IMG/VR virus record: IMGVR_UViG_3300029945_000001
Coordinates: 144,375-208,374 of that record
Strand: one strand, 5' to 3'
DNA: 64,000 nt
Shown here: positions 27,124-62,716 of the stretch, piece after piece
Position numbering within the stretch: position 1 is the stretch's first letter
Layout of the letters: the number at the start of each line of letters is the position of its first letter
Translations under genes and position numbers: made by a program
The notes under the pieces: generated by a model
Told to the model about the DNA's origin: nothing
What the model saw: only the letters and a program-made list of their open reading frames with translations
The model's database searches: none

Positions 27124-27131
27124 GGATTTAA

Positions 27132-41406: not shown

Positions 41407-42018
41407 ATGTCATTTACTATGACACAGTTAGGTGCATTTCCTCTTGCTGGTAATCTTTTAGGTGGTGGCGGAAACGATGCCATTGTTAACAAGATCAATA
41501 ACTCATTTCAAAGTAATAACTTCTTTGGAAATATTCAAGACGATTTTACAAGTATTCGTAAATCCTTTGTTGATACAGTCATTCGTGATATTCGTATGTC
41601 TGAAGTTAAGTTCAATGAGGCCATGACTACTATCGATGTACAAGAAAATAATATCAAACCGTTAGAAACATTAGATGATCTTAGAGATACACCTTCTATT
41701 ATGTTCCATCCTATTATTACATATGCGCCAGTATTGAATCTATTAAAACAAGGAAGAATTAGTGGATTTGGATTTGATCCAGAACATATTGATGAAGAAG
41801 ATGTTTATGGAAGATTAATTAATAATGGTAGAGTTGATGATGTTATGGAAGCCATGGATGAAAATGGAATTGTTACATTTAAAAATGTTTGGTATAGTGA
41901 CGATCCTGTATTAACAAGAAGTGAATTAGATGCCATTGAACGAACTCGTGATTTTGTTGATACTGTTATTAGAGTAATGAAGTTAGATCCTACAAATCCA
42001 GATTGTGATTTAGGATAA
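41407..42018 (+). CDS. Conserved hypothetical protein of the nucleus-phage core block
   Basis: RBS aggag; 203 aa; YGRLINNG..DPTNP motif. Confidence 0.65.
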   Translation: MSFTMTQLGAFPLAGNLLGGGGNDAIVNKINNSFQSNNFFGNIQDDFTSIRKSFVDTVIRDIRMSEVKFNEAMTTIDVQENNIKPLETLDDLRDTPSIMFHPIITYAPVLNLLKQGRISGFGFDPEHIDEEDVYGRLINNGRVDDVMEAMDENGIVTFKNVWYSDDPVLTRSELDAIERTRDFVDTVIRVMKLDPTNPDCDLG

Positions 42019-43095: not shown

Positions 43096-44233
43096 TTTTG
43101 GTATTATTAATTTAACTGATGTTCATTTAGGACATTATAAAACACCGAGTCAATATATCATTGATAATCTTTATATGTATTTATTTCCATTATTAAAACA
43201 AGAAACTACAAAACTTCTTTTGATCAATGGTGATTTTCTAGATACACTTTTGTATTTAAATCCTAGTGTAAATATCATTCTTGGTTTTATAGTTGATCTT
43301 CTTTATCGGTGTAATAAAGAAAGTATTGTTGTTCGTGTTGTGAGGGGTACATATTCTCACGATAGAAATCAAATGTCATTATTTAAATTACTGTATGATA
43401 AACACAAGTTTACAAACGATTTAAAATACATAGATAAATTAACATATGAAAACATCAATAGTTTAAATAGATCTTTTATCTATATACCTGACGATTTACC
43501 ATATGAGGATAGTTATGCTATTATAGAAGAAGTAAAGAATTTGCTATCTATTAATAACGTATCTCATGTTGACTATGTGACAGTTCATGGCAACTTTGCA
43601 CATGCTCTTCCAGAAAATATATCATTACCAAAGTGTACTTTTTCTGCTGAGCAGTTTAAGGATTTTGTTAAGAAAGCAGTGTTATGTGGACACATCCATC
43701 TTGTGTCTGTTTATGAAAATGTATACTTTAGTGGATCTTTTGATAGACTTGCTCATAATGAAGAAGAACGCAAAGGATTCTTTTATATATTAGATATGGA
43801 AAATGGATTTACTCCAAAGTTTATAGAAAATAAAAATGCTATGCCTTATATAACATTTAATATGATGAACATAACTGATCTTGATGATATCATTTCTGAC
43901 TTTGATAAAAGAATGGATAAGTTTTATAAGGATAGGTCTGTATATGGTTTTGTTAGAGTTATTCATAATTCAAAAGAAGTAAAAACTATATTAACAAGAT
44001 ATGTAAAACAAAACTACACAAATATTATCTTTACTTATAAAAAAGATAAAACAGAAAAAGATAATCAATTTAAGTTACATCAAATGAAAGAGATTAATAA
44101 AGATAGACCAATTCCAACTCCAGATACATTACCAAAGTTAATTCACGAAAGATTAAAACTAAAATCAAATATCGAATTATCCGAAGAAATGATACAGTCT
44201 ATTCTTGATAGTCTCGACGAACCATTAATTTAG
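43052..44233 (+). CDS. sbcD: SbcD/Mre11-like metallophosphoesterase nuclease
   Basis: TDVHLG, INGDFLD, RGTYSHD, TVHG, CGHIH, SGSFDRL. Confidence 0.92.
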   Translation: MNKIAQNGKSQTTTDFGIINLTDVHLGHYKTPSQYIIDNLYMYLFPLLKQETTKLLLINGDFLDTLLYLNPSVNIILGFIVDLLYRCNKESIVVRVVRGTYSHDRNQMSLFKLLYDKHKFTNDLKYIDKLTYENINSLNRSFIYIPDDLPYEDSYAIIEEVKNLLSINNVSHVDYVTVHGNFAHALPENISLPKCTFSAEQFKDFVKKAVLCGHIHLVSVYENVYFSGSFDRLAHNEEERKGFFYILDMENGFTPKFIENKNAMPYITFNMMNITDLDDIISDFDKRMDKFYKDRSVYGFVRVIHNSKEVKTILTRYVKQNYTNIIFTYKKDKTEKDNQFKLHQMKEINKDRPIPTPDTLPKLIHERLKLKSNIELSEEMIQSILDSLDEPLI

Positions 44234-44245: not shown

Positions 44246-45118
44246 GTGTCTTATCAGTTTCCAGCTGTTAATAATACAGATGTATCCTCTAAATCTGGAG
44301 ATCTTATTCTTGGTGGTAGTATTGGAATTAATAAGATTCTTCTTTACTTTAGAGAAAATGCGCATAAAGCCAGAAGAAAAGAATGGGATTTATTCTTTGT
44401 AAACGTTTATACATTAGGAAGAAACTGTTTTAGATCAGGAATGAAGTTAGACGAATTTGTATTTGGAATTGATAATGAAATAGAGAAATTAACAACGTAC
44501 TATAGTGCTTATACACAAGCAAGAGAAACTAGAAAAGTAGGACTCATTTTTTACATACCAGATTATGAACATATTCCAAGATATTTACGATTAGAAAAAA
44601 CTGGACAGAAAAAAGAATTTGATGAACTTTATAGAGAATTGTTAAAAGCTCATAAGAAAACTAAATATGTAGATTTAACAGAAGATGAAAATATACAAAG
44701 ATTTTTAATAAATGTTCAAGATGCTGTATATCCACACAAAGCTCTTCCTCTTATAACCGGTAAAAAATTCGGTAATGTAGGAACATTATTACTATCACAC
44801 GTTGCTATGGATTATCATCTCTATAAGAGTTATAAGAACATCAATGTCATTGAGTCGCATCAAGGTAATATTTTAGAATATCAAGATTTTGGTAAAAAAC
44901 TTATCAAAGATGTAAGAGTACCGTTTAATACAATAACACATCGGGTATTTGGTGACAGTACTGTATTAAAACCTCTTCTAGAAAAAAAAGATAAGAAGAA
45001 ATTATTAGAAAATATCAAAACTAAAAATTGGTTTATTAGAACAGACTATGAATTGAAAAAGTTTATTTTAGAAACTACCTCTATTAAAGAGACCGATTTA
45101 GATTTTCTTAAATTATAA
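44246..45118 (+). CDS. Conserved hypothetical protein, possibly inactive 5'-nuclease/PIN-like fold
   Basis: GTG start with RBS ggggagg; LLLSHVAMD and VFGDS motifs; position after sbcD. Confidence 0.5.
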   Translation: MSYQFPAVNNTDVSSKSGDLILGGSIGINKILLYFRENAHKARRKEWDLFFVNVYTLGRNCFRSGMKLDEFVFGIDNEIEKLTTYYSAYTQARETRKVGLIFYIPDYEHIPRYLRLEKTGQKKEFDELYRELLKAHKKTKYVDLTEDENIQRFLINVQDAVYPHKALPLITGKKFGNVGTLLLSHVAMDYHLYKSYKNINVIESHQGNILEYQDFGKKLIKDVRVPFNTITHRVFGDSTVLKPLLEKKDKKKLLENIKTKNWFIRTDYELKKFILETTSIKETDLDFLKL

Positions 45119-45190: not shown

Positions 45191-45820
45191 ATGTCTGACC
45201 AAAAAAGCTATGAGCAGAAGCCCTTCGAGCCGAAGCCTTACGATTTTTCTCGCCTGGTCAATCTGCGAGGATCGGATAACAAGGATGCTTCTCTGAATAT
45301 TGGCGTCTATAACGGCAACGCATCCTTGGCCGTCATGGTCAAGAATGTTCAGGGCGGTCCTGTGTTCAAGTGGAATCTGAGCCGCAATGCCATGGTGGTT
45401 CTGCGCAGCAAGTTTCGTAAGCTGCTGGTAGAGCAGCATCCCGAGACCCACGAGACGATCAATCTCACGATTTATGATGACAAAGAAAAGAAATTCATGC
45501 CCAACGGGTGTGTTGTCATCGGTCGGAATGACAAGAACGTCTGTTATATCGCTGTTAATGGCCAGAAGGCTGAGCGGTTGCGGTTCAACATTCGGGCCAG
45601 TCTGAACTTTGAACTTCAAACTCCTATGGATGAAGTCGGCCGTTCAAACATCGGTGTCGAAACCATCATCGAACAGCTTGGTGCCGACATTCCTTATGCT
45701 GTTCTTCTGACCAGCTATAAGCGCGAATTCGCCGGCCAGGGCGGTCGCCCCAATAATAATACTGGTGGTAGTGGTGGTTATCAGAAGAGTGTTCCTCAGG
45801 AAGATATCTTCGGCGGCTGA
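45191..45820 (+). CDS. chmC: ChmC-like nucleus-associated nucleic-acid-binding protein (Whirly-type fold) with disordered tail
   Basis: Two beta4-alpha units, G/N-rich tail (GQGGRPNNNTGGSGGY), GC-leaning codons, directly upstream of the sigma-like nvRNAP subunit. Confidence 0.6.
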   Translation: MSDQKSYEQKPFEPKPYDFSRLVNLRGSDNKDASLNIGVYNGNASLAVMVKNVQGGPVFKWNLSRNAMVVLRSKFRKLLVEQHPETHETINLTIYDDKEKKFMPNGCVVIGRNDKNVCYIAVNGQKAERLRFNIRASLNFELQTPMDEVGRSNIGVETIIEQLGADIPYAVLLTSYKREFAGQGGRPNNNTGGSGGYQKSVPQEDIFGG

Positions 45821-45931: not shown

Positions 45932-47551
45932 ATGTTAAAGATTATAAAGATTATTACCGAAACTGACCGCCCTCAATCAGGTATTGCTAAACTTGTTCAT
46001 GACTTTGATATCAATAATTCCGACGACGATGTGACGTTTCATATAGGCGGTTCTTATAAAAAATTAGTCTCTTATGATAAGCAGAAAGAAAATCATTGGG
46101 ATGAGTTAATGCTTCCGGCGAATGCTTTTCTCGAATCTTTACCAGAAGAATTTCAACGAGAAGTATTATTGTTCTTTATTAAAGCTAATCAGATTATTTC
46201 GACAAACATGTATGATCAAAAATCTATGAATGTTTCCCTGGAGGTTATTGGGGATCTATTAATAGAATTGTCAAATTCTAAGAATTCGAATATGAGTCTT
46301 CCTACAAGGCTTATTACATTTGTTAAAGAATCCGGTATCCCTGTTCCTAATCTCGATAAAGCTATGACTGAGCCACACCATACAAATTCATTAACATTTA
46401 AATATGTAGATTATGTTAATGTTATTGCTATTTCTGTTTTATGTAAAATGATTTGTCCTATTTGGGGAGAAATCATTCATAAGACAACATCTTTCATTTC
46501 TTCTGATATGAAAGAAATTTATTGTATTAAGATTTTAGACAAGTTATTAAGAACTAGTGAATTGGATACTATTGATTCTAAGTTTACAAACTATTTGGAT
46601 AATATTATTAATCGTCGAGATAACAATGATAGAAGTAAGTTTACAGCTTCTATCAGCGGATATTCTCCTGTTCGTGTTCGTAAGTTTATTTATGCTACTA
46701 TGCTTGTTAAGAAACTCATTAATATTGATCTATTAAAAGATGATTCTGATGTTATGAAATATATCGATACTTGTACAAAGAGTTCTTTCTCTGCTTTAAG
46801 TATGACAGTTAATCGTGGCAACAATGTCATGAGTAGAACAGAACTTACAGAATCTAGTGGTGGTGATGAAGAGTCTAATACAACACACCTCGAACATAGT
46901 TCGAAGGTATCGCAAATACCTGCTGATATTCCGATCATTATTGAGTATGGTGTTAATTGTCATATTGAAGCTGTTTGTAAGAACTACAATATTTCTTTTG
47001 ATATGTTTAGGGATGCTGTTAACTATTATCGGAATAACATTGTACAAGTTAATAGCTTTAATACCACTATTGCTGGTTTGATCATCGGTCCTATTATCGG
47101 TGGTGCAAAAGGGTTACAATATCTTAATGCAGATACGTTCTGTAAACTCATTGTTGTAACTCAAATTTATTTAGCATTGAGTGGAAAATCTGCCCTTGTT
47201 AATTTGTTAACATGTAATACACCGAATGATAAGAAAGATAGTGCATTATCAACGGTTGGCAATCGTATTAATATGAGTTATAATCAAACAATTGAGTATA
47301 GAAATTGTATTGCATCGTTTCCTAATTCTATTGGTGATAATTCTTTTGTCAATGTTATTAATAGTCTTAAAGATTTTATTATTCTCTATGATCACAAATA
47401 TAATACTGCTCCTATGTTATTCAAATTAATCAATCAGGATATTGAAAATGGAGAAGATGTTTATTATGACGATGAAGTTGTTCGTGATATTTGTAGAATA
47501 ATTTTACAGGTCAGGAACTCTCAAATGCCTGAAGAAAAGATCGAAGAGTGA
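45932..47551 (+). CDS. Sigma-like specificity subunit of non-virion RNAP (phiKZ gp68-like)
   Basis: 539 aa, all-helical, KMICPIWGE motif, early promoter, synteny. Confidence 0.65.
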   Translation: MLKIIKIITETDRPQSGIAKLVHDFDINNSDDDVTFHIGGSYKKLVSYDKQKENHWDELMLPANAFLESLPEEFQREVLLFFIKANQIISTNMYDQKSMNVSLEVIGDLLIELSNSKNSNMSLPTRLITFVKESGIPVPNLDKAMTEPHHTNSLTFKYVDYVNVIAISVLCKMICPIWGEIIHKTTSFISSDMKEIYCIKILDKLLRTSELDTIDSKFTNYLDNIINRRDNNDRSKFTASISGYSPVRVRKFIYATMLVKKLINIDLLKDDSDVMKYIDTCTKSSFSALSMTVNRGNNVMSRTELTESSGGDEESNTTHLEHSSKVSQIPADIPIIIEYGVNCHIEAVCKNYNISFDMFRDAVNYYRNNIVQVNSFNTTIAGLIIGPIIGGAKGLQYLNADTFCKLIVVTQIYLALSGKSALVNLLTCNTPNDKKDSALSTVGNRINMSYNQTIEYRNCIASFPNSIGDNSFVNVINSLKDFIILYDHKYNTAPMLFKLINQDIENGEDVYYDDEVVRDICRIILQVRNSQMPEEKIEE

Positions 47552-48687
47552 GTAGTATTATAAATTATATTTCTTTAGATCGAGATAGAAGTGTCCTCAC
47601 GGGCACTTCTTTCGGTTATACGAGAATGATAAGTGGATTTTATCAACCTACTATTGTTGGAGACCCATTAGAAATTGAAGCTGATCAAAATATAACATAT
47701 CCTAGTTTTATAAAATTAATAGAGTATGAATATCAATGTGGTAAAGCTTTTATCATTGAAAGACTGTGTTTTAAAGATGATAAGATGTACTATCCGTATC
47801 ATGTTAGTTTTCATGATATTGAAGAAGGTTCACATTCAAATGACTATATCTTTGTTAACCATATTAATAATATTCATAAATCAATAACAAATACAAAGTT
47901 TAAACATAATACTCCACTTAGAGCATTTTGTAATAAACTTGATAGTAATTCATATCAGATAGAAAATCAATATATGAAATATTCAGATTTTTATAATACT
48001 GTAAGCCAGACGTTTTATGATACGACTGCATTAACGAACTTTTTATATACAGAAAAACGTAATAAGAGACCTATTATGGATGATTATAATTGGTATATAT
48101 TTCCTAAAGTTCCTATAAGTGATACATTAAGTAATATTGCATTAACAGAACCTTTAACATTAGATCATTTTAAACAGAATGCTAATTATGGATTGGATAT
48201 GTCAGAGCTTCATAAATTTGATTTATACGACATCAGTAACAAAATGAATATTATTGTTAATGATAAACAATTTGACGATATCTTTATGATGTTTATATCT
48301 TTGAAAAGGGCATATACTGATTTGCATTATAACTATATATTACTTAATGGTAACGTATTTGTAGATGATAATCACGATAGCATTTGTATCGATAGACTTA
48401 ATAGAAAGTATCCTTTTAGAAATGCATATGGTCCTAAAGATGTACTTTCAGTAATTGTAAAAAAATTACTTAAGTATGCACAACACAATATCGATATCGC
48501 TAATAACATTAGTTGTTCTTTTATGAATAATCCATTATGTAAAATAAAAATTTGTATTCATATGACGTTTAACGACGAAGCTGTAATTATAGTTTATAAT
48601 GAAGAGAATGTACGTGATTGGTTTTGTATTTATTTTGATTTAGCTTTATTGTTATTGACAAGCTCTAATTTCATTCGAACCGTCTAA
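47548..48687 (+). CDS. Hypothetical protein
   Basis: GTGA overlap with upstream gene; 379 aa; no motif. Confidence 0.6.
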   Translation: MSSIINYISLDRDRSVLTGTSFGYTRMISGFYQPTIVGDPLEIEADQNITYPSFIKLIEYEYQCGKAFIIERLCFKDDKMYYPYHVSFHDIEEGSHSNDYIFVNHINNIHKSITNTKFKHNTPLRAFCNKLDSNSYQIENQYMKYSDFYNTVSQTFYDTTALTNFLYTEKRNKRPIMDDYNWYIFPKVPISDTLSNIALTEPLTLDHFKQNANYGLDMSELHKFDLYDISNKMNIIVNDKQFDDIFMMFISLKRAYTDLHYNYILLNGNVFVDDNHDSICIDRLNRKYPFRNAYGPKDVLSVIVKKLLKYAQHNIDIANNISCSFMNNPLCKIKICIHMTFNDEAVIIVYNEENVRDWFCIYFDLALLLLTSSNFIRTV

Positions 48688-48706: not shown

Positions 48707-50347
48707 ATGGCTAACTTTATTGGTAATGATTATGAATTGAATAATAAAGGCATGTTTGAAAATAAATTTAATAATGACAAGAAAGTTGTTATTTATATAT
48801 TCTCCCCTCGTAATTTTACTGATCAATGTATACGTCCTATGACATATGAAATTAATCGTGGTGTTCTTGGACAAGTTCAAGAGTGCATGAGCGATGCCGT
48901 TCATCAATGTAATGAAAATCTTGTTTTGAAATTAGCTGATGATATTAATGTTCAGGGAGCCATCAAATCACAATGGTCTCCTGATCGTATTGTTAAAGCC
49001 AGTGAGTTCAGTCATGAAACTGGCTGGACTTTTCTTATGTATATTGATAATCTTCCTATTTATAATAGCAGTGGTATTCAGATGCAATGTGCAAATAGTC
49101 GAACTATCTATTTTGGACGATTTAGTGACGAACCTATGAATCTGCATGGTACCATCAATCCCGATACTGTCATGATTATTCTTCATAAAACTGGCGTTAC
49201 TGCACAACGATATGGTGATAAAGATCTTATTGGTCTCCAAAATGATACTGATATTATCCACGGAAATACTTTACAGTTCTTATCTGATCGCGATTCGTAT
49301 TTGATGCGTCCTGAAGAATTAAGCAATGTTACCGATTTGACGAATAATACTTCTGTTACAATGATTACTGAAATGAATAAGCTTGGTAATCAAGGTGAAG
49401 CTATTATTACAAATACTAGTTTAAAAACACCATCTCAAAATATGGGTCATATTCTTCGCGGTATTGCTAAAACTAAGATTGATGCTCGTAGTCCTAATAA
49501 TGGGATGATGCATTCTGATTTGTTACAAGAATCTTATTTTGATAGTCTTACAAACAATTTACGAGATGTTAGTTTTGGATCTTCCATTCTTGATCTCGAT
49601 AGTTGTATTTCATTAGGTGATTTTGTTAGTCGATTTGACCCTAAAATTATTGATTTCAATGTTGGTAATGGATTTAACCAAAGAGATCAAAGTGTTGCAT
49701 GTGCTTCGAATGCAGCTAGCTCTATGTTGGCACAGGTCATTCCTGTTGTTATGACACAGTATATGATTGCAAATGTTGGTTTTGTTTACAATAGCTTTTA
49801 TGATAAACAACAATTAAATGTTGGCGGACGAGCCCTTGAAGTTACCCAGGGTACTCTTGGATATCTTGTCCCCAACCTTGATGAAGATACTAAAGCTCGT
49901 AATTTTCAATATTTTATTCGTGATCTTACAAATGGTATTTTTAAAGTTCTTGAATTTCAACGTGGTGATTTTGAACTAAGTGCAAGTGTCTGTTTTGCTG
50001 GTTTAACGCATATTAACTTTCATTATCTTTGCGACAATGAACGATATCGTGAAAACTATGAAGTTCCAACTATTCTTGGTGGTATGATTTCTCCGCTTAT
50101 TGGATCTGGTGATGCGATTGGATATAACAGTAGAAATTTGAGTACCTTATTAGGTATTGGTATTGGTGATGATACTCGTCCTCTTCTTGGTATGGATGAT
50201 GGTCCTTCTGAGATGCAGAAGCTTTTTGGTGCTATCGACGAAGGACGTAAGAATAAGAATTTTGGATCTATTGGTAACGGAAATAGTTTTATAAATAATA
50301 ACAGCAACATCTTTAAAAGCAATAACGACGATGATCTTATTTTATAA
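48707..50347 (+). CDS. Putative PicA/Imp1 nuclear-import protein (phiKZ gp69-like)
   Basis: 546 aa; position between the gp68-like subunit and the nvRNAP beta gene; RBS ggaggg. Synteny-based. Confidence 0.55.
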   Translation: MANFIGNDYELNNKGMFENKFNNDKKVVIYIFSPRNFTDQCIRPMTYEINRGVLGQVQECMSDAVHQCNENLVLKLADDINVQGAIKSQWSPDRIVKASEFSHETGWTFLMYIDNLPIYNSSGIQMQCANSRTIYFGRFSDEPMNLHGTINPDTVMIILHKTGVTAQRYGDKDLIGLQNDTDIIHGNTLQFLSDRDSYLMRPEELSNVTDLTNNTSVTMITEMNKLGNQGEAIITNTSLKTPSQNMGHILRGIAKTKIDARSPNNGMMHSDLLQESYFDSLTNNLRDVSFGSSILDLDSCISLGDFVSRFDPKIIDFNVGNGFNQRDQSVACASNAASSMLAQVIPVVMTQYMIANVGFVYNSFYDKQQLNVGGRALEVTQGTLGYLVPNLDEDTKARNFQYFIRDLTNGIFKVLEFQRGDFELSASVCFAGLTHINFHYLCDNERYRENYEVPTILGGMISPLIGSGDAIGYNSRNLSTLLGIGIGDDTRPLLGMDDGPSEMQKLFGAIDEGRKNKNFGSIGNGNSFINNNSNIFKSNNDDDLIL

Positions 50348-50432
50348 AATATGATATCATATTCTAGAATTGAAACCGGAGTGGGTTGTTGACAACCCAT
50401 TTCTATTCTTCAGAAAATCCAAGGGGACTTAA

Positions 50433-51725
50433 ATGACAGCTGACATTGTTATGGTTAAAACCCATGATGTTACGAATTGTCTTAGATATTTAATTAACTT
50501 ATCTGCGCCTGTTTATTCTACTGATGATGATGGTTATGTTATCGATTCTAATGATAATCGTATAAAGATTACTTCTGGTAAGGATGAGAAACGCCATGTA
50601 TTATTATTCCAAGAAGTCTTTAATGATCAAGAAGCACTCATGCTTAACCCGTTTGCTGAGCTCACCACTGATCATCCTGCTAATCGTTTCTTCTATAGAA
50701 CTGTTCGTGGCGGCGCTGTTGGTTGGATTCAATTTGCTTATCGCGAGCTTATCAAAGTAGCTGTTAAAGCTAAAGATAAATCTGAAAAGACTATTCCTAC
50801 AAAATTAATTAATCTTGTTAGTGGTATTGTTGACAAGGTCGATGAAAAGACTCTTGTTGAATTTGATAAAATTCTTAAGAATGAAACTGATATGTTTGTT
50901 GATGTTATGTATCGCGATAAAACTATGATGTGTACTTTGAATGTTCGTCTTTTAAATAGTAAGCAAGAACTCATTGATGCTTATAAAGAAAAGTTCAATG
51001 TCCGTAAGGGTACTTGGGCAGTTCTTATGTATCTTACTGAAAAGATCTTTGATATTAAGACTATTGATGAACTTGAAGAAAAGTATTATGTAAAGCCTGA
51101 ATTCGATGGTCCAGTTGCTCCGTGTCCTCGAATGATTTCTACTGTTCATTTATTGTACAAAATCTATGATAAGATCAATCCTATTATTGATATGGTTGAT
51201 GGTATTTATACTAAGAATATGTCACAGTTTGCCATTCATGTTAATAATCTTCCCAAGTATATTAAAATTGCTAGTAGTGTTGCACAAGATGCAAATAAGA
51301 TCAATTCTTCTGTTGCTAGAATTGTCCAGAAGCCTGCTCAACAGCAACAGAGTACTGGAAATTCAATGTTTGGTAATTTAACAAAATCAAATAGTCTCTT
51401 TGGTGATAATTTAAGTACACCTAAGAATGCATATACTGAACATCTGTTTGGTTCTGGATTTGGTAGCACTGGTTCATTTGCTAATTTGAATAATCAATCT
51501 AATCAGAATGGTGGTGGTATGTTTGGAGCCATGTTTGGTGGTGGTAGTTCATTTGGGAATAATAATAATAATAATAATAACTTTGGTTCTAATCAGAGTA
51601 GTAATTTTGGTAGTTTCAATATCGAAAAACCGATGCCATTAAATCGCGCCCCTATGGCTGGAGAAGGATCGAATTTTGGGAGTAATTCGTTTGGCGGAAC
51701 TCCCGGAATGCCAAATATCCTATAA
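50433..51725 (+). CDS. phiKZ gp70-position protein: folded N-terminal ~300 aa plus 128-aa FG-repeat low-complexity tail
   Basis: RBS agggga; LNPFAE motif; tail from QQQQS (51339) has 11 FG dipeptides in N/S/G/Q-rich spacers. Confidence 0.75.
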   Translation: MTADIVMVKTHDVTNCLRYLINLSAPVYSTDDDGYVIDSNDNRIKITSGKDEKRHVLLFQEVFNDQEALMLNPFAELTTDHPANRFFYRTVRGGAVGWIQFAYRELIKVAVKAKDKSEKTIPTKLINLVSGIVDKVDEKTLVEFDKILKNETDMFVDVMYRDKTMMCTLNVRLLNSKQELIDAYKEKFNVRKGTWAVLMYLTEKIFDIKTIDELEEKYYVKPEFDGPVAPCPRMISTVHLLYKIYDKINPIIDMVDGIYTKNMSQFAIHVNNLPKYIKIASSVAQDANKINSSVARIVQKPAQQQQSTGNSMFGNLTKSNSLFGDNLSTPKNAYTEHLFGSGFGSTGSFANLNNQSNQNGGGMFGAMFGGGSSFGNNNNNNNNFGSNQSSNFGSFNIEKPMPLNRAPMAGEGSNFGSNSFGGTPGMPNIL

Positions 51726-51784: not shown

Positions 51785-52933
51785 ATGACAGAACCAAAAG
51801 ATAGAGTTAGTTCTGTAGAAACATTTCATGGTTATGTTGCAGAAGATAAAGATAAAGATAGTGTAATTATAAAAGTATATATTCCAGAATTACAACCAAT
51901 GCAAACTGGTGCTATCGATGCTAAGAATTCTAGCGCAAATATTGCGGTTATGGATGCTTCTGGTAAATCTATAACTTTTAATACAACAACATCAAATAAT
52001 ATTTCTGCTACGTATGAAGGTGATGGTAATCATAAATATCCTCCTGATGTTATGAAAGGCGAACAGGTTACTGTTAGAAGAGTAAGTTCTGATAAATTTA
52101 CTTGGTCTTGTGATGGTCGAGATAAATACCTACGGAAAAATGAAACACTAAGAATAGAAATAGCAAATAGGCAGGGCGAAGATGATCTCGATGATACAAA
52201 TACTTATTTGATTGAATTAGATACAAAAAGAGGAAAACATTTTAGAATATCATTGGCTAATAGTGATGGTGAATTTACATCTTATAAATTAGAAGTAGAT
52301 ATGGATAATGCTACTGCTTATTTTGGAGATATATTGGGAAATACAGTGTGTATTGATAGTAATAAACCACAAGTTGTTTTAACAAACTCCGATGACTGTA
52401 TGATAAACTTACAAGGAAAAAATGGGCAAATCATTATACCAGAAACATTGCTCATTTCAGCTGGTAAAAATATGATTTTAAATTCCCCACTACTAAGTAT
52501 TGCAAATACTTCTGGAGATGGTATATTTGAAATCGCCTCTAATTTTGTTAACTTTACTGTTACAAATTCAACTGTTTTTAATAGTCCTTGTTTTGGCGTA
52601 ACTGGTTCATCTAAATTCATCGGACAGATGGTTGCTTCTGCTATTAGAGCTGCAAGTTATAATTCTGGAGATCCAGGATCTCAATATAAAGCTTCATCCA
52701 TCTCATCTGGGTTAGATGGTAGTTGGAGTGGGACTGCGAATGGTAACTCTCCAGATAATGGAACTGGTGATGGTGAACGACATACTGCTGCTTATGAAGA
52801 TATGGTGAAAACTATAAATACAGTTATTGAATGTTTTAATCAGGTTCAGGGCGTTATTGGCGTTCCTTCTTCGCAAGGACAGCTAGCTGGAGAAGTTGCA
52901 GCATCTATTATGCCATTGAATATGGGAGAATAA
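51785..52933 (+). CDS. Baseplate central-spike-like protein (gp5/VgrG OB fold plus beta-helix)
   Basis: GYVAEDK..IIKVYIPEL..YPPDVMKGEQVTV OB-fold pattern followed by short beta-strand repeats. Confidence 0.55.
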   Translation: MTEPKDRVSSVETFHGYVAEDKDKDSVIIKVYIPELQPMQTGAIDAKNSSANIAVMDASGKSITFNTTTSNNISATYEGDGNHKYPPDVMKGEQVTVRRVSSDKFTWSCDGRDKYLRKNETLRIEIANRQGEDDLDDTNTYLIELDTKRGKHFRISLANSDGEFTSYKLEVDMDNATAYFGDILGNTVCIDSNKPQVVLTNSDDCMINLQGKNGQIIIPETLLISAGKNMILNSPLLSIANTSGDGIFEIASNFVNFTVTNSTVFNSPCFGVTGSSKFIGQMVASAIRAASYNSGDPGSQYKASSISSGLDGSWSGTANGNSPDNGTGDGERHTAAYEDMVKTINTVIECFNQVQGVIGVPSSQGQLAGEVAASIMPLNMGE

Positions 52934-52938: not shown

Positions 52939-53433
52939 ATGTTTTTTATAAAGGAGAAAACTGAAAAGATAGATATGTATACTGAATTAAATTTATTTTA
53001 TGATGTCATTATATCTTGGTGTGTAGATCAAGACTTTTTAATAGATGAAAATGGAATATATAGATTAAACACGGATAAAGAAGATGATCATAAATATATC
53101 ATTATGACTATTGCCAAATGGGATCTAAAATCTGTTATCGTAAAGACGCATCTTAGTAAGTTTATAGAAGAAGTTTTAAATCAATTTGATACTATGTCAA
53201 AGATTATAGATTTAAATATTTTTATAGAAAACAATATATCAAGATCATTTCTATTAAACTTAAAAGAAAAACATAAATTAACATTAACTGAGAATTTAGA
53301 TGTTTTTTATAATAAGTATAAAAGTTATGAAGTTATTACAGTAAAAGAGATATTTAAAAGATACCCCTGGATATGGCTATTCTGGTATATTCAATATATT
53401 TTCAGAGGAACTGTAAATTATAACAGAAAATAG
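52939..53433 (+). CDS. Hypothetical protein
   Basis: 164 aa; ends YPWIWLFWYIQ. Confidence 0.55.
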   Translation: MFFIKEKTEKIDMYTELNLFYDVIISWCVDQDFLIDENGIYRLNTDKEDDHKYIIMTIAKWDLKSVIVKTHLSKFIEEVLNQFDTMSKIIDLNIFIENNISRSFLLNLKEKHKLTLTENLDVFYNKYKSYEVITVKEIFKRYPWIWLFWYIQYIFRGTVNYNRK

Positions 53434-53477: not shown

Positions 53478-53828
53478 TTACAATGTTGTTTTAACCAAAG
53501 ATGTTTTATATAAATTAAATACAGTCCTTAAGTATTCAATAGTTGGAACATACATAAATTTAATATCTTTAAATTGTTCATCTCCATGAAGATCATTTAT
53601 CTCTCTAATGACGTATTCTAAATCTAAACTAATACCAACATATTTCATATAGTCTTTCAATCTATATTGATATGTTGCCATAATGTCATATGTCAATGTA
53701 TATATTTTAGAATTTTTAATAAATAGATTTTTATAATCTTTTACAAATTGTATCCAACCTGCATCAGTATTGCTATATTTTGAAATAACTGAACTTCTTA
53801 ATATACTGGATAATGTGGTTGAAGCCAT
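53478..53828 (-). CDS. Small baseplate/LysM-like (T4 gp53-type) protein
   Basis: YQYRLKDYM...YVIREINDL...FMYVP pattern; RBS aggagg. Confidence 0.4.
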   Translation of the reverse strand: MASTTLSSILRSSVISKYSNTDAGWIQFVKDYKNLFIKNSKIYTLTYDIMATYQYRLKDYMKYVGISLDLEYVIREINDLHGDEQFKDIKFMYVPTIEYLRTVFNLYKTSLVKTTL

Positions 53829-53971: not shown

Positions 53972-56062
53972 GTGTCAAAGTTACAAATCGCCGAAGAGTT
54001 TCCGAGTTTAGATAATGTTAGTGTTGATAGTCGTATTCTTGGATTACAGCCTGGTTTATATCCTCATTTAAAGAATAGTTCTGGTCAGCGCACTGATATG
54101 CACGGTTCGCATGTCAATCAAACTATTTTAGTTGATGGTAGTCAATTTGCATTTCAATTTACTGGTAAAGAATATGACTTTGGACAATTTGATATTAATG
54201 ATACTCATAGAGAACAAGATATGATTATTCTTGCTGTTGTTCAAAAGTATCCTAACATCAATTATATTCAGCAGGCACATACAGTTATCTGTAAGGGTCT
54301 CGATGATTGTAAAATCCATCACTTTATTGTTAGTCCATATACTAAAGTTGCTGATGGTTTTGGTTATGAAAATGTTTTAAGCAATAGACATTCTCTTCGA
54401 GCTGGTGAAGTCCTTTTAAAAGAAACTGTTCTCTCAAGATCTCCTATTAATAAAGATGGTGCTTACTGTATGGGTCGTAATGTTAATGTTGCATATATGA
54501 CATCTCCCCATATCATTGAAGATTCCATGTGGATCTCCGATGAATTAGCAGATAACTTAAGTTCTAGTGCTATCTATAAACAGATTTTTGTAATCGGAAG
54601 TAATAACATCCCGATTAATCTTTATGGTGATGATGTTAACTATAAATTCCTTCCTGATCTTGGTGAAACTATTTCTGATTATGGTATTATTTCTGCATTT
54701 AGAAAAACAACACCAGAAACATTTATTGCAGATACAATGCCTAATGAATTAACAAAACCTCAGGCTATGCATGATATGTGTTATGTTGCACATAAAGGCG
54801 CTAAAGTTATCGATATCGATGTTCAGATTTCTCGCGGTGCTAAAATCTCTGGCAAGTGGTATGACCAGGCTAAGAAGTATTCTGATAGTCATATTAAATA
54901 CTGTGAAGAAATTGTTAAGGTTTATGAGACGAATCGTAACTTAGAATGCTCAAGTGCTTTTAATAGATTAGTTTCTGATTGTATGAAACGATTAATTGCT
55001 GAAGGTAGACGAGTTAAAAATATCTATACAAAATGCAAGCTTGGTATTATTGGTAGGAATAATCGTCCTATCGAATTTATGAGAATTGTCGTTACATATA
55101 TTGAAAAACGCCATATGTCCTTTGGATATAAAACTACTGGTCGTGAAGGTGCGAAAGGTGTTATTGGACATATTGTTCCAAAGAGCTGTATGCCTGTTGA
55201 TGAAGATGGATTTGTTGCTGATCTTGTTTTAGATCCTGCATCTTGTATTGCACGCATGAATACAGGACAATGGATAGAACAAGGTATTAATCGTATTTCT
55301 GAATTTGTTAGACGAAGAGCTGTTGAGCTATATAAGACAGATAAACAATCAGCAATCGATATGTTATTTGAGTATTATAATGATCTTAATCCTAATTATC
55401 TAAAACAAGTTATTGCAACGAATCCAGATTTTAAAAGTCAGTGTGTGCATTTTGGAAGAAGTACTAGTGATGAAGGTGGTATTTATATTTGGTTGCCTCC
55501 GTTCTTAAAACACATTACTATGAAACATTTTGATTTCTTAAGAAAGAAGTATAAAGTTGGTATTTCTAAAGCATCTTATAAACGCGTTGATAGCGATGGC
55601 AATATCATTGCTGAGTTCGTATCGGATAAACCTGTTTGTATTGGTTCTAAGTATGTTATCGCGCTTTGTAAAGTTCCTTATCAGACAGCACCTGGTGTTG
55701 GTCATGTTAATCAATTTGGCGTTCCTATGAAGTCATCTAATCCTAATATTAAAAATCAATATACGGTTCGTATTAGTGCATTGAAATATGGCGAAGATGA
55801 ATGGCGAACTGTTGGTATGGATATGGGCGAAGATGCAAATGAAATGATTCGTTATACGAGCCTACATGCAAACAGTCCTACTGGTGTTAATGTTCTAGTT
55901 ACTGATATTTTAAAGAATAAGAATCCTACAAATATTGAACGTATCAATATTACTAATGAAGAACTTGTTAAGAAGAATAGTGTCTTAAATTTGTTCAGTC
56001 ACATGATTACAACTTTAGGTATTAAGATTGAATCTGAACTTAAAGAGGTTATTAGCCCATGA
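53972..56062 (+). CDS. Non-virion RNA polymerase beta subunit, C-terminal part (phiKZ gp71-73-like), uninterrupted
   Basis: SSGQRTDM, GRNVNVAYM..IEDSMWIS, GYKTTGREGAKGVI (both catalytic lysines), DEDG..DLVLDP..ARMNTGQ, KYGEDE. Confidence 0.93.
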   Translation: MSKLQIAEEFPSLDNVSVDSRILGLQPGLYPHLKNSSGQRTDMHGSHVNQTILVDGSQFAFQFTGKEYDFGQFDINDTHREQDMIILAVVQKYPNINYIQQAHTVICKGLDDCKIHHFIVSPYTKVADGFGYENVLSNRHSLRAGEVLLKETVLSRSPINKDGAYCMGRNVNVAYMTSPHIIEDSMWISDELADNLSSSAIYKQIFVIGSNNIPINLYGDDVNYKFLPDLGETISDYGIISAFRKTTPETFIADTMPNELTKPQAMHDMCYVAHKGAKVIDIDVQISRGAKISGKWYDQAKKYSDSHIKYCEEIVKVYETNRNLECSSAFNRLVSDCMKRLIAEGRRVKNIYTKCKLGIIGRNNRPIEFMRIVVTYIEKRHMSFGYKTTGREGAKGVIGHIVPKSCMPVDEDGFVADLVLDPASCIARMNTGQWIEQGINRISEFVRRRAVELYKTDKQSAIDMLFEYYNDLNPNYLKQVIATNPDFKSQCVHFGRSTSDEGGIYIWLPPFLKHITMKHFDFLRKKYKVGISKASYKRVDSDGNIIAEFVSDKPVCIGSKYVIALCKVPYQTAPGVGHVNQFGVPMKSSNPNIKNQYTVRISALKYGEDEWRTVGMDMGEDANEMIRYTSLHANSPTGVNVLVTDILKNKNPTNIERINITNEELVKKNSVLNLFSHMITTLGIKIESELKEVISP

Positions 56063-58017
56063 TCAAGTTTGATGTTTTTAATACAAAGATAGATTTTGAT
56101 TTAACGAAACAGTTATTAGCTAATAAGAATGAAATTTTCCTTGTGGATCTTGAAGATGGTCCATTGGAAATATCTGGAAAGTTCTTAATGTTAAATGTTT
56201 GGTTTTGGAAAATTCTTGTTGATAGAAATGTCCGTCCTTCTAGAAAACATTGTTTATTAGAAAAAATAATCACTAAAGAAAATCAGACTGCTGTATTAAC
56301 ACATATTGAGAATACTATTCGTGAAAGAAATCCTAATTATATTAACGAGTATGTAAAAGATAAATTAGGAAATGATCTTAAGTATTTAACACTAAATGAT
56401 GATATTTGTATGTGTGATAATAATATTCATCGTATGGTGTCATGGCAACTTGGTTCTTACGAAATGTCTTGCTCTGCATTTGAAATATGTGATATGTTAT
56501 TCGATCAAGAATATGATCAGCATAGAAAGTATGATATTAAGAAAGAAGAACGTCTTGGTATTAAACATGTAGAGAAAAGAATAGCCAATCAAATAGATAC
56601 TTTTATTAAAGAGATTAGTGATAACGACACTATTCTTTCTATTCCTCTTAAAGTTGGTTCTATGAGTAAGAAACAGATTGGTCAGGTTTTTGTTGGTATT
56701 GGATATCGTACCGATGCTGACGATACTATTGTTATGCGTCCTATTACTGAAAATTACTTAGATGGTTTAAACAGCACACACTCTTATTTAACAGAAAGTC
56801 TTGCTGGCAAGAAGACAATCTATTACAATAAGGATGCTATGCCGGATAGCCAATATAGTAATCGCAGACAACAGATTCAGAGTTCTATTATCCAAAAGTT
56901 ATATGCTGGTGATTGTGGAACAGATCGTTTTATCCAAGTATATATCCATGCTGGTATTGCTAGTAAAGGACAAATGGATGGTAAATTGATTTATGAAAAT
57001 GGTGTTCTCACTATGATCAATAGAGAAAACGTCTCTAATTTTTATGGTAAATATGTTAACATGCGTTCTCCATTTACATGTAATCACACCAATGGTACAT
57101 GTGCGGTATGTCTTGGTGCATTGGCAGCACAATTCTTACCCTCTACAAATATTGGTTTAGAAGCTGCACAAAACTATATGAGTGATGCATCACAACTTGT
57201 GTTGAGTGCAAAACACTTTACGAATACCGATGCTGTTCTCTATGGTATTCCTCCGCAAATGAAAGAATATCTATTTATTAGACAAAATGATATTTATCTT
57301 AGAGAAGAATTTAATATCAAACCAGTTAAGGTTGGTATACCTTTTATTAATATGAAGAATATAAATGATCTTAATAGTATTAAGAATGATAAGTTTATTC
57401 ACGAACAACATTTTAGTAGTATTACAGAAATGCTCTTTATACGCGGAGATACTGGTGAACTTGTATCACAATATGCAACAATGCCAATGAACAATATTAT
57501 CCCGTTCTTCTCATTAGAATTCTTGAAATACATTAAAGCTAATATCCATCGTTGTACTATTGACAATATGATTTGGATTCCTCTTGATGAGTTTAATGCA
57601 GCTGAATATCCGATTATGAGATATACCATTGAGAGTAGTAGTATGGTTAAATTTAATAACAGTTTGAGCAATTTTATGCTCAGTGGTGTTGCTTCATATA
57701 CCTCTATTTCTGATGTCTTACGAGATTTTAGTGAACTTGTTTATAAACAAATTACAACCAATTTTGCTCATATCGAAATCGTCCTCAAATCTTATCTTAA
57801 AACATCTAAAGATAATTATAGAATTCCAATTATTCGAGATCCGAATAATGTCATGTTCGATAGTCTTGGTCGTAATATTCCAAGACGATCTATTGGTGCA
57901 CAATTTGCATATGAAAAACAAATGGCATATCTTACAAATCCTAAGACTTATCTTGAAGACAAACCTCCTGGATTTTTCGATACATTCATGGGTCTTACAG
58001 TTGGTCTTAGTCTCTGA
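56059..58017 (+). CDS. Non-virion RNA polymerase beta-prime C-terminal subunit (phiKZ gp74-like)
   Basis: YLDGL..ESLAGKK, DCGT, MRSPFTC...CAVCLG Zn site, SQLVLSAKH trigger-loop region. Confidence 0.9.
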   Translation: MIKFDVFNTKIDFDLTKQLLANKNEIFLVDLEDGPLEISGKFLMLNVWFWKILVDRNVRPSRKHCLLEKIITKENQTAVLTHIENTIRERNPNYINEYVKDKLGNDLKYLTLNDDICMCDNNIHRMVSWQLGSYEMSCSAFEICDMLFDQEYDQHRKYDIKKEERLGIKHVEKRIANQIDTFIKEISDNDTILSIPLKVGSMSKKQIGQVFVGIGYRTDADDTIVMRPITENYLDGLNSTHSYLTESLAGKKTIYYNKDAMPDSQYSNRRQQIQSSIIQKLYAGDCGTDRFIQVYIHAGIASKGQMDGKLIYENGVLTMINRENVSNFYGKYVNMRSPFTCNHTNGTCAVCLGALAAQFLPSTNIGLEAAQNYMSDASQLVLSAKHFTNTDAVLYGIPPQMKEYLFIRQNDIYLREEFNIKPVKVGIPFINMKNINDLNSIKNDKFIHEQHFSSITEMLFIRGDTGELVSQYATMPMNNIIPFFSLEFLKYIKANIHRCTIDNMIWIPLDEFNAAEYPIMRYTIESSSMVKFNNSLSNFMLSGVASYTSISDVLRDFSELVYKQITTNFAHIEIVLKSYLKTSKDNYRIPIIRDPNNVMFDSLGRNIPRRSIGAQFAYEKQMAYLTNPKTYLEDKPPGFFDTFMGLTVGLSL

Positions 58018-60526: not shown

Positions 60527-60556
60527 CAGTAGGAGGCTTTTAGCCTCCTACTGCTA
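60524..60556 (+). terminator. Terminator hairpin
   Basis: tagcagtaggaggct-ttt-agcctcctactgcta. Confidence 0.75.
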
Positions 60557-60596
60557 TATTTCATAGTATTCTTTTTTAGTTAAATATTATATTTTA

Positions 60597-60616
60597 TCTA
60601 TTATATGATTAACTCT
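60597..60616 (+). promoter_or_regulatory. 20-bp putative late promoter, identical to 37602-37621 (minus)
   Basis: tctattatatgattaactct. Confidence 0.6.
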
Positions 60617-60677
60617 CGTCCTTAGGACACTAGGTCATGATCGAAAAATATAACCATCCTATGAGGAGGCTTATGCG

Positions 60678-62702: not shown

Positions 62703-62716
62703 TCTGGGCGTATGAG

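What the first reader, a model, noticed from the sequence alone, without database searches (positions are those of the whole stretch)
50433..51725. FG-nucleoporin-like tail in the gene next to the phage-nucleus import factor
Seen: after ~300 folded residues the protein ends in a 128-aa disordered tail (51339-51725) with 11 FG dipeptides (SMFG, SLFG, HLFG, SGFG, GMFG, AMFG, SSFG, NNFG, SNFG, SNFG, NSFG). They are spaced by N/S/G/Q-rich, nearly uncharged linkers, including QQQQ and an N8 run. Established: this is the grammar of cohesive GLFG/SLFG nucleoporins (Nup98/Nup100/Nup116) that form the selective phase of eukaryotic nuclear pores; chimallin-shell phages import proteins selectively via PicA/Imp1 (phiKZ gp69). 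Inference: the gene lies directly downstream of the gp69-position gene, so this phage may use a convergently evolved FG-repeat gate or condensate at shell import sites. I know of no description of this.
Basis: partly seen in the sequence, partly recalled or inferred. Interest (0 to 1): 0.92.

Follow-up and report, generated by a model that had tools for sequence, protein, structure and literature searches.

The report
Phage nuclear-shell protein with FG-repeat tail
A very divergent giant phage encodes, next to its nuclear import factor, a member of a protein family seen at the phage nuclear shell, and its disordered tail carries 11 phenylalanine-glycine repeats like those of nuclear pore proteins; that repeat pattern is strongest by far in this phage and its function is untested.

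Summary
ORF 50433-51725 encodes 430 aa. About 285 residues fold confidently. A 128-aa tail holds 11 FG; 11 of its 13 Phe precede Gly, against 2.3 FG in shuffles (P<1e-5).

The gene is a distant homolog of phiKZ gp70 / PhiPA3 gp64 (hhalign 98.9%, E 2e-17). The upstream gene is a divergent PicA/Imp1. ChmC/Imp6-like, Imp3-like and non-virion RNA polymerase genes lie in the phiKZ order. Published work places PhiPA3 gp64 at the nuclear shell with PicA and ChmC. PhiKZ gp70 did not pull down with Imp1.

Of 204 family proteins, 203 have a C-terminal tail of at least 40 aa (median 132 aa, 6% charged, rich in P/Q/G/N). Phe, Tyr, Trp and Met sit next to Gly more often than chance. Most tails end in a hydrophobic tip; in this clade it is PGMP. 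FG counts are low: median 0, and the next highest are 6, 6 and 5. The conserved feature is therefore a sticky, uncharged tail, and this phage has an extreme FG version of it.

A cohesive or docking tail at the shell transport site is the best reading. A true FG permeability gate is possible but unsupported (about 0.12). I found no description of this in the searched literature.

The parts
50433..51725 (+). Gene for the 430-aa gp70 / PhiPA3 gp64-family protein, a phage nuclear-shell-associated family
   Evidence: ORF. There are 248 homologs at E<1e-3 in 1.84 billion representative proteins. Profile-profile match to the phiKZ gp70 family: 98.9%, E 2.2e-17 over 253 columns. Foldseek matches only uncharacterized proteins, five of the six best from named jumbo phages.
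50433..51317 (+). Folded N-terminal domain (about aa 1-295), a mixed alpha/beta fold with no relative among solved structures
   Evidence: Block-mean pLDDT of 83-98 for residues 11-280. No PDB fold match (best E 0.48, TM below 0.16). No PDB sequence match. Conserved motifs include NPFAE (aa 72-76) and R191.
51339..51725 (+). Disordered C-terminal tail of 128 aa with 11 FG motifs in N/S/G/Q-rich, low-charge spacers
51558..51580 (+). Perfect (AAT)7.7 trinucleotide run encoding the Asn run; the only DNA-level repeat in the tail
51699..51722 (+). C-terminal tip TPGMPNIL, a short motif shared with clade relatives (PGMP followed by hydrophobic residues)
   Evidence: Tips in relatives include VPGMPILR, IPGMPQGIYR, APGMPWGIIR and TPGMPHLRR. 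G[MLIV]P occurs in the last 14 residues of 39 of 203 tails.
48707..50347 (+). Divergent PicA/Imp1 (phiKZ gp69)-like gene directly upstream
   Evidence: phrog_3141 at E 3e-5; 201phi2-1 gp125 matches phrog_3141 at 1.5e-163. Clade orthologs at 26-30% identity hit phrog_3141 at 6.7e-12, 8.9e-6 and 1.7e-4. A full-length collinear hhalign has E 0.005 but low probability.
50378..50403 (+). Terminator-like hairpin between the PicA-like gene and this gene
   Evidence: 11-pair stem followed by a T-rich tail. This is a consensus match only.
45191..45820 (+). ChmC/Imp6 (phiKZ gp67)-like gene with a short G/N-rich tail
   Evidence: phrog_3284 at E 2.7e-5, the same family as 201phi2-1 gp123. Sequence.
45932..47551 (+). 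phiKZ gp68-like gene (non-virion RNA polymerase subunit family)
   Evidence: phrog_3209 at E 2e-25, the same family as 201phi2-1 gp124.
41407..42018 (+). Imp3 (phiKZ gp59)-like gene
   Evidence: phrog_3254 at E 8e-7. Pairwise E 8e-5 over 183 aa to 201phi2-1 gp114, which its record annotates as similar to phiKZ gp59.
53972..58017 (+). Two RNA polymerase beta/beta'-like genes (phiKZ gp71-73 and gp74 equivalents) that anchor the synteny
   Evidence: phrog_3295 at 1.3e-114 and phrog_3015 at 2.2e-84. tblastn gives about 26% identity to 201phi2-1 gp129.

Best explanation
The gene is this phage's ortholog of phiKZ gp70 / PhiPA3 gp64. That protein family is specific to jumbo phages and is encoded in the conserved block that also holds ChmC/Imp6, the gp68 polymerase subunit, PicA/Imp1 and the non-virion RNA polymerase. 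Shown here: the family has a fixed three-part plan, with a folded N-domain of about 285 aa, an uncharged low-complexity tail of about 130 aa, and a short hydrophobic C-terminal tip. Also shown: across the family, Phe, Tyr, Trp and Met in the tails sit next to Gly more often than chance, while Leu, Ile and Val do not. Lineages use different versions of this pattern. PhiPA3 is Met-Gly rich, many relatives use Tyr-Gly, and this phage is an almost pure FG version. FG-rich versions also occur in distant relatives. Inferred: the tail is a multivalent, weakly self-associating ('sticker and spacer') region. It holds or concentrates the protein at the nuclear shell transport site, or binds hydrophobic pockets on partners there. 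The C-terminal tip acts as a docking peptide. This parallels the neighbouring ChmC protein, whose disordered tail is needed for condensate formation and for shell localisation. The pure FG form probably arose as a lineage-specific choice of sticker residue under that same constraint.
For: Homology to gp70/gp64:
- A local family profile hits the gp70 set at E 2e-16.
- hhalign gives 98.9%, E 2.2e-17.
- Gene order matches 201phi2-1 and Proteus phage 10.
- The same order holds in clade relatives L020, L021 and the contig carrying P0091.

Tail architecture:
- 203 of 204 family proteins have a tail of at least 40 aa, median 132 aa, 6% charged, with P 15.6, Q 11.3 and G 11%.

Grammar in the 147 closer relatives:
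- Enriched against shuffles: FG 1.97x, GF 1.94x, YG 1.71x, GY 2.15x, GM 1.98x, with z of 7-13.
- Not enriched: LG, IG and VG at 0.75-0.81x.
- In the Pseudomonas-type gp70 set, YG, GY and GF are enriched but FG is not (0.84x).

Other FG-rich tails in distant relatives: P0049 and P0050 with 6 FG each, and P0198 with 5.

Selection rather than slippage or AT bias in the window tail:
- No DNA repeat underlies the motifs.
- F is 13 while Y is 1, I is 2 and K is 3.

Literature:
- PhiPA3 gp64 localises to the nuclear shell, is expressed early, is absent from virions, and was pulled down with ChmB together with PicA (PMC10643120).
- Deleting the ChmC tail abolishes condensates and shell localisation (bioRxiv 10.1101/2023.09.22.559000).
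Against: - No function is known for any family member.
- PhiKZ gp70 did not co-purify with Imp1 in E. coli, and the same preprint lists it among nuclear proteins rather than shell proteins (bioRxiv 10.1101/2024.03.27.586873).
- Aromatic residues in the family tails are not more evenly spaced than random (mean z 0.06), so one hallmark of prion-like sticker-spacer domains is missing.
- The shuffle z-scores pool related sequences and so overstate significance.
- No chimallin gene could be confirmed in the window.
- Localisation and self-association of this particular protein are untested.
Confidence: 0.5

Rival explanations
1. True convergent FG gate. Copies of the protein ring or fill the PicA import site, and their FG tails form a cohesive selective phase. 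PicA-bound cargo crosses it by binding FG motifs, as transport receptors cross nuclear pores.
For: - FG density is 1 per 11.6 aa. Charged residues are 6%, the spacers are N/S/G/Q rich, and 5 of the 11 motifs have Met or Leu just before the Phe.
- Nucleoporin_FG is the only Pfam family listed for the tail at E up to 10.
- The gene sits next to a PicA/Imp1 homolog.
- The PhiPA3 ortholog is at the shell and was pulled down with ChmB along with PicA (PMC10643120).
- A 2025 review states that the route of protein transit through the shell is unknown and that no channel has been seen (PMC12908238).
Against: - FG is not conserved in orthologs: the median is 0, and the closest relatives have 0-2.
- The Pfam score of 11.4 bits is far below the 32.2-bit cutoff.
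- The tail is only 128 aa.
- PhiKZ gp70 did not bind Imp1 in pull-downs (bioRxiv 10.1101/2024.03.27.586873).
- A terminator-like hairpin separates the two genes.
- PicA-dependent import recognises folded cargo surfaces, and no FG-binding receptor is known.
Confidence: 0.12
2. Linker plus docking peptide, as in bacterial SSB. The tail is mainly a flexible, loosely constrained spacer that presents the conserved C-terminal tip (PGMP followed by hydrophobic residues) to a partner such as the chimallin lattice, ChmB or the polymerase. The FG pattern is a lineage quirk with no role of its own.
For: - The tip is the most position-specific feature of the tails.
- Tail composition varies widely between lineages (Met-rich, Tyr/Gln/Pro-rich or FG-rich) while length and low charge are kept.
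- Neighbouring proteins (ChmC-like, PicA-like) also end in short hydrophobic tips after disordered stretches.
Against: - A pure spacer would not place 11 of 13 Phe before Gly (P 3e-7).
- It would not enrich aromatic and Met residues next to Gly across the family while Leu, Ile and Val are not enriched.
- Aromatic content is kept at about 7%, median 10 per tail.
Confidence: 0.25
3. Client or scaffold of nucleic-acid condensates. The tail drives the protein into ChmC-RNA or replication and transcription condensates, inside the nucleus or at its inner face. Its role would be in transcript handling rather than protein import.
For: - The gene lies in the non-virion RNA polymerase block.
- ChmC from the same block forms RNA condensates through an N/G-rich tail (bioRxiv 10.1101/2023.09.22.559000).
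- PhiKZ gp70 is listed among nuclear proteins (bioRxiv 10.1101/2024.03.27.586873).
Against: - The N-domain is not basic: pI is 6.5 here and the family median is 6.3.
- The domain has no recognisable nucleic-acid-binding fold.
- The tail lacks Arg and RGG motifs.
Confidence: 0.1
4. Neutral drift. The tail is under little constraint, and the AT-rich genome (about 30% GC) pushed it toward Asn and Phe codons, producing FG motifs by accident.
For: - The genome is about 30% GC.
- Asn is the commonest tail residue, and a perfect AAT run shows slippage at that spot.
Against: - AT bias would also enrich Lys, Ile and Tyr, but these number 3, 2 and 1 of 128.
- Gly, which uses GC-rich codons, stays at 18%.
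- The Phe-then-Gly order is highly non-random.
- Only the Asn run is a DNA repeat.
Confidence: 0.03

Closest known systems
PhiPA3 gp64 / phiKZ gp70 / 201phi2-1 gp126 (uncharacterized nuclear-shell-associated protein of Chimalliviridae)
   Same: The N-domain is homologous (hhalign 98.9%). The gene sits in the same place, directly after PicA/Imp1 and before the RNA polymerase genes. The plan is the same: folded domain, uncharged disordered tail and hydrophobic C-terminal tip.
   Different: Similarity is detectable only by profile methods; direct BLAST, PHROG and word-based searches found nothing. The tail here is FG/Asn-rich, whereas PhiPA3 is Met-Gly rich and 201phi2-1 is Gln/Pro/Tyr-rich. This clade has extra genes inserted on both sides.
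GLFG-type FG nucleoporins (Nup98, Nup100, Nup116; Pfam PF13634 Nucleoporin_FG)
   Same: FG density is about 1 per 12 residues. The spacers are low in charge and rich in N, Q, S and G. Met or Leu precedes Phe in 5 motifs. A disordered region is attached to a folded anchor domain. The comparison values for nucleoporins come from established knowledge and were not computed here.
   Different: There is no homology; the Pfam score is 11.4 bits against a cutoff of 32.2. The tail is 128 aa rather than several hundred. FG is not conserved among orthologs. No transport-receptor partner, pore scaffold or barrier function has been shown.
ChmC / Imp6 (phiKZ gp67, PhiPA3 gp61) N/G-rich C-terminal tail
   Same: It is encoded in the same gene block and is a shell-associated protein. 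It has a folded domain plus a disordered, Asn/Gly-rich tail. For ChmC that tail is required for condensates and for shell localisation (bioRxiv 10.1101/2023.09.22.559000). A ChmC-like gene is present at 45191-45820.
   Different: The ChmC tail is shorter (50-70 aa), lacks aromatic repeats and ends in an acidic segment. ChmC has a Whirly RNA-binding fold, whereas this N-domain has no known fold.
Bacterial SSB (OB fold, disordered Gly/Gln/Pro-rich linker, conserved C-terminal tip)
   Same: Both have three parts: a folded domain, a low-complexity uncharged linker and a short conserved C-terminal docking motif. This is an analogy from established knowledge.
   Different: The fold is different and there is no acidic tip. 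No DNA-binding features were seen (pI 6.5).

Membership tests
phiKZ gp70 / PhiPA3 gp64 family | Homologous N-terminal domain of about 285 aa | tested here: met
   hhalign of A1 against A2 gives 98.9%, E 2.2e-17 over 253 columns. hmmsearch with the family profile hits 201phi2-1 and PhiPA3 relatives at up to 2e-16. Foldseek against BFVD matches uncharacterized proteins, five of six from named jumbo phages, at about E 1e-7. Direct PHROG and BLAST searches were negative.
phiKZ gp70 / PhiPA3 gp64 family | Position directly downstream of PicA/Imp1 within the non-virion RNA polymerase block | tested here: met
phiKZ gp70 / PhiPA3 gp64 family | Long, uncharged, low-complexity C-terminal tail ending in a hydrophobic tip | tested here: met
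   203 of 204 family proteins have such a tail. The window tail is 128-135 aa and 6-7% charged, with the tip TPGMPNIL.
phiKZ gp70 / PhiPA3 gp64 family | Localisation to the phage nuclear shell during infection; early expression | not testable with these tools
   Known only for PhiPA3 gp64 (PMC10643120). This phage is an uncultured metagenomic contig.
FG nucleoporins (GLFG type, Pfam PF13634) | Dense FG motifs in a disordered, low-charge region with N/Q/S/T/G-rich spacers | tested here: met
   11 FG in 128 aa, 8 charged residues, and N+G+S+Q making up 57%. The region is predicted disordered.
FG nucleoporins (GLFG type, Pfam PF13634) | Match to the Nucleoporin_FG profile at Pfam's gathering score | tested here: not met
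   E 0.63 and 11.4 bits against a cutoff of 32.2.
FG nucleoporins (GLFG type, Pfam PF13634) | FG repeats kept across orthologs | tested here: not met
   The median is 0 FG in 203 tails. Counts: 0 in 116 tails, 1 in 53, 2 in 14, 3 in 12, 4 in 4, 5 in 1, 6 in 2, and 11 in 1 (the window protein). Clade relatives L020 and L021 have 0 and 2.
FG nucleoporins (GLFG type, Pfam PF13634) | Forms a cohesive selective phase and binds transport receptors at a pore | not testable with these tools
   This needs purified protein and infection assays. No multimer prediction tool was available.
PicA / Imp1 (phiKZ gp69) family, for the upstream gene 48707-50347 | Sequence homology to gp69 family members | tested here: met
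   phrog_3141 at E 3e-5 over aa 31-265. Orthologs in L021, L020 and L010 hit phrog_3141 at 6.7e-12, 8.9e-6 and 1.7e-4, and hit no other family. The collinear hhalign is weak (E 0.005, probability 7%).
Prion-like aromatic sticker-and-spacer low-complexity domains | Aromatic residues flanked by Gly or Ser in an uncharged polar region | tested here: met
   Aromatic-Gly and Gly-aromatic dipeptides are 1.7-2.2x enriched in the 147 closer relatives and 5x in the window tail.
Prion-like aromatic sticker-and-spacer low-complexity domains | Aromatic residues spaced more evenly than chance | tested here: not met
   The family mean z is 0.06, and 49% of tails fall below zero. The window tail gives z of -1.7, which is suggestive only.
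Chimalliviridae (nucleus-forming phage), for the genome | Encodes chimallin (ChmA) | tested here: inconclusive
   The gene at the chimallin position (37815-39401) has no PHROG, PDB or tblastn hit. hhalign to two chimallins gives E 0.19. The single-sequence AlphaFold2 model has pLDDT 36. PicA, ChmC, Imp3 and non-virion polymerase homologs are present.

The most novel reading that the evidence does not exclude
The gp70/gp64 family is the missing 'barrier' part of the phage nuclear import site. Its uncharged tails, with aromatic or Met residues next to Gly, would form a cohesive phase around the PicA punctum that admits only licensed cargo. This phage would then show the clearest case of convergence on the FG-nucleoporin solution, found independently by a bacterial virus.
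Probability: 0.12. Interest if true: 0.92.

Novelty: new variant of a known kind. Interest (0 to 1): 0.62.

Why it matters
How folded proteins cross the chimallin shell is an open question. A 2025 review says no channel has been seen and the transit mechanism is unknown (PMC12908238).

This analysis shows that a third shell-associated protein family, encoded next to PicA/Imp1, carries a long, uncharged, sticky disordered tail in nearly all sampled members. The papers I read and searched do not mention such a tail. In one deep-branching phage the tail has taken the exact form of cohesive FG nucleoporins.

That gives a concrete test in tractable phages such as PhiPA3, phiKZ or Goslar: delete the tail, or change its sticker residues to Ser, and measure localisation, import and fitness. 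If the tails do form a selective phase, it would be a striking case of a bacterial virus and eukaryotes converging on the same solution. If they do not, the family remains an example of a folded domain, a low-complexity tail and a docking tip in a phage organelle.

Tried and rejected
- **Direct similarity searches with the ORF.** tblastn and megablast against 50,697 phage records, PHROGs, Pfam and the word-indexed search of 5.8 billion proteins all found nothing. Only the full phmmer scan found relatives.
- **Closer relatives carrying an FG tail.** IMG/VR and JGI metagenome scans returned only identical copies of the same phage. An IMG/VR scan with a profile of the family added two relatives at 27-29% identity. 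P0163 is the same tail with one substitution.
- **Fold assignment of the N-domain.** There is no PDB match by structure or by sequence profile.
- **DNA slippage as the origin of the FG motifs.** Rejected, because only the AAT run repeats.
- **A virion or tail role suggested by the neighbouring 'baseplate' gene.** The neighbour 51785-52933 is a phiKZ gp164-like virion protein (PDB 6orj). It is an insertion specific to this clade. PhiPA3 gp64 is absent from virions (PMC10643120).
- **Confirming chimallin at 37815-39401.** All sequence tests were negative and the single-sequence structure model was unusable, so no fold search was run on it.
- **Rfam scan of the window.** No RNA family matched.
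- **Even spacing of aromatic residues.** It is not a family property.
Full report
**1. The observation**

ORF 50433-51725 (+) encodes 430 aa. An AAGGGG ribosome-binding-like motif precedes its ATG.
- Composition is N 25, G 23, S 18, F 13 and Q 7, with only 8 charged residues.
- Eleven of the 13 Phe are followed by Gly.
- None of 100,000 shuffles reached 11 FG (mean 2.3). The binomial P is 3e-7.
- Among the window's 66 ORFs of at least 110 aa, the next best 128-aa stretch has 3 FG. The background is 0.29 FG per 100 aa, against 8.6 in the tail.
- Only the Asn run is a DNA repeat, (AAT)7.7 at 51558-51580. The FG motifs are therefore not recent slippage copies.
- AlphaFold2 with an 81-sequence alignment gives block-mean pLDDT of 83-98 for residues 11-280 and mostly below 50 from about 290 onward.
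- The gene is identical in the four IMG/VR contigs compared. A 229,851-bp JGI contig matched at 100% over the queried first 305 aa.

**2. Which genome this is**

The window is about 30% GC. It has no nucleotide match among 50,697 phage records. Its RNA polymerase beta-like protein is only about 26% identical to those of phiKZ-like phages.

Gene order matches the conserved phiKZ block as annotated in 201phi2-1 and confirmed by PHROG families:

| Window gene | Assignment | Evidence |
|---|---|---|
| 43052-44233 | SbcD-like | |
| 44246-45118 | Uncharacterized (phrog_3229), at the position of the gp66 gene | |
| 45191-45820 | ChmC/Imp6 (gp67)-like | phrog_3284 |
| 45932-47551 | gp68-like | phrog_3209, E 2e-25 |
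| 48707-50347 | PicA/Imp1 (gp69)-like | phrog_3141 |
| 50433-51725 | The ORF under study | see section 4 |
| 53478-53828 (-) | Small reverse-strand gene | phrog_3455 |
| 53972-58017 | Two polymerase genes | |
| 58113-59678 | Helicase | |
| 41407-42018 | Imp3 (gp59)-like | |

This clade has extra genes at 47548-48687, 51785-52933 and 52939-53433. The same layout occurs in IMG/VR relatives L020 and L021 and in the contig carrying P0091.

**3. Is the upstream gene PicA?**

Probably yes.
- It hits only phrog_3141, at E 3e-5 over its N-terminal half. 201phi2-1 gp125 (the phiKZ gp69 equivalent) defines that family at 1.5e-163.
- Orthologs from the same clade are 26-30% identical to it at E 1e-26 to 1e-44. 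They hit phrog_3141 at 6.7e-12, 8.9e-6 and 1.7e-4, covering the middle and C-terminal parts.
- A profile comparison built from very few sequences is collinear over 398 columns, but weak (E 0.005, probability 7%).

**4. What the ORF is**

Direct searches failed. A full phmmer scan of 1.84 billion representative proteins with the N-domain found 248 homologs at E<1e-3 and 98 at E<1e-10. The listed best 150 are mostly 350-500 aa, with the match at their N-terminus.
- A profile of this set hits the phiKZ gp70 / 201phi2-1 gp126 / PhiPA3 gp64 family at E 2e-16.
- hhalign gives 98.9% probability, E 2.2e-17 over 253 columns.
- The predicted fold has no relative in the PDB.
- In the viral structure library, all six matches at E<=0.001 are uncharacterized proteins. 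Five come from named phages: Ralstonia RSF1 and RP12, Erwinia PhiEaH1, Klebsiella Miami and an uncultured Myoviridae.

The ORF is therefore a true, deep-branching member of the gp70/gp64 family.

**5. What is known about that family**

- Enustun et al. [quoted passage not shown] It is expressed early, is absent from virions, and appears with PicA in ChmB pull-downs. No function was assigned.
- Kokontis et al. (bioRxiv 10.1101/2024.03.27.586873) tested phiKZ gp70 as an Imp1 partner. Imp1 pulled down gp67 (Imp6) but not gp70.
- The ChmC study (bioRxiv 10.1101/2023.09.22.559000) showed that ChmC's N/G-rich tail is needed for condensates and for shell localisation in PhiPA3.
- A 2025 review says the transit route for proteins is unknown (PMC12908238).
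- The Enustun paper contains neither 'disordered' nor 'low-complexity'. Searches linking the phage nucleus to FG repeats or nucleoporins found nothing relevant.

**6. Tails across the family**

Of 204 proteins with a complete N-domain match, 203 have a tail of at least 40 aa. The median length is 132 aa and 6% of residues are charged. Pooled composition is P 15.6, Q 11.3, G 11.0 and A 9.0%, with aromatic residues near 7%.

FG counts are low: 0 in 116 tails, 1 in 53, 2 in 14, 3 in 12, 4 in 4, 5 in 1, 6 in 2, and 11 only in the window protein.
- The closest relatives, at 27-35% identity, have 0-2 FG and use Tyr, Gln and Pro instead.
- The PhiPA3 gp64 tail is Met-Gly rich with no FG.

A broader pattern does hold. 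In the 147 closer relatives these dipeptides are enriched against shuffles, with z of 7-13: FG 1.97x, GF 1.94x, YG 1.71x, GY 2.15x and GM 1.98x. LG, IG and VG are at 0.75-0.81x. In the Pseudomonas-type set YG, GY and GF are enriched but FG is not (0.84x). These z-scores pool related sequences and are upper bounds.

FG-rich tails also appear in distant members: P0049 and P0050 with 6 each, and P0198 with 5. Aromatic spacing is not more even than chance in the family.

Most tails end in a hydrophobic tip. In this clade it is PGMP plus hydrophobic residues; the window protein ends TPGMPNIL.

**7. Interpretation**

The conserved unit is a folded domain, a sticky uncharged tail and a docking tip. 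The window protein is the extreme FG form of that tail.

AT bias alone does not explain it. Lys, Ile and Tyr are rare in the tail, and Gly stays at 18%.

The resemblance to GLFG nucleoporins is real at the level of composition and motif. It is not homology. The Pfam Nucleoporin_FG model is the only family listed for the tail at E up to 10, but at 11.4 bits against a cutoff of 32.2.

I judge a cohesive or docking role at the shell transport hub to be most likely (0.5 overall; the family assignment itself is about 0.9). A linker-plus-tip role comes next (0.25). A true FG permeability gate is possible but unsupported (0.12).

**8. Limits**

- No close relative of this phage exists in the collections searched.
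- No multimer prediction was possible.
- Chimallin could not be confirmed in the window.
- All functional statements rest on orthologs at the limit of sequence detection.

Noticed in passing
window 37815-39401 (+) and 9666-11987 (-): The 528-aa gene at 37815-39401 runs at 52-56% GC inside a genome of about 29% GC. The 2-kb bin covering most of the 773-aa gene at 9666-11987 is 55% GC. Neither has a PHROG or PDB sequence hit. The 528-aa gene sits exactly where chimallin lies in phiKZ-like phages, between a reverse-strand gene and the gp55-like polymerase. The pattern may reflect recoding of very highly expressed genes; it is unexplained.
   Followed up: partly
window 17772-19100, 26000-28000, 60000-64000: There are lesser GC peaks of 40-42%. 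ORFs at 26309-27034 and 61179-62702 resemble tail fibre proteins in PHROGs. The 442-aa ORF at 17772-19100 has no hit.
   Followed up: partly
window 51785-52933 (+): A phiKZ gp164-like virion protein (PDB 6orj, E 6e-12; PHROG 'baseplate assembly protein') is inserted between the gp70-like gene and the polymerase genes. Clade relatives L010, L012, L020 and L021 carry it at the same place.
   Followed up: yes
window 47548-48687 (+): A 379-aa gene with no family hit lies between the gp68-like and PicA-like genes. It is conserved in position in L021 (23% identity). The contig carrying P0091 has a gene of similar length (374 aa) at the same position, with no sequence available. The gene is absent from 201phi2-1 and Proteus phage 10.
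   Followed up: partly
window 48707-50347 and 45191-45820; L001 and L002: The shell-associated proteins of this block all end in a disordered stretch followed by a short tip. The PicA-like protein here ends NFGSIGNGNSFINNNSNIFKSNNDDDLIL and the ChmC-like protein ends QEDIFGG. Proteus phage 10's ChmC homolog ends DFDDDIPF, the same tip as bacterial SSB. A shared docking site for these tips is an open idea.
   Followed up: no
window 50378-50403 (+): A terminator-like hairpin (11-pair stem, then a T-rich tail) lies between the PicA-like gene and the FG-tail gene. The two genes may therefore not be strictly co-transcribed.
   Followed up: no
window 30246-32012 (+): A 588-aa protein is related to phiKZ gp98 and to chains named as jumbo-phage collar and tail-terminator proteins in recent PDB entries (E about 1e-7). 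It is not chimallin, although its size is similar.
   Followed up: yes
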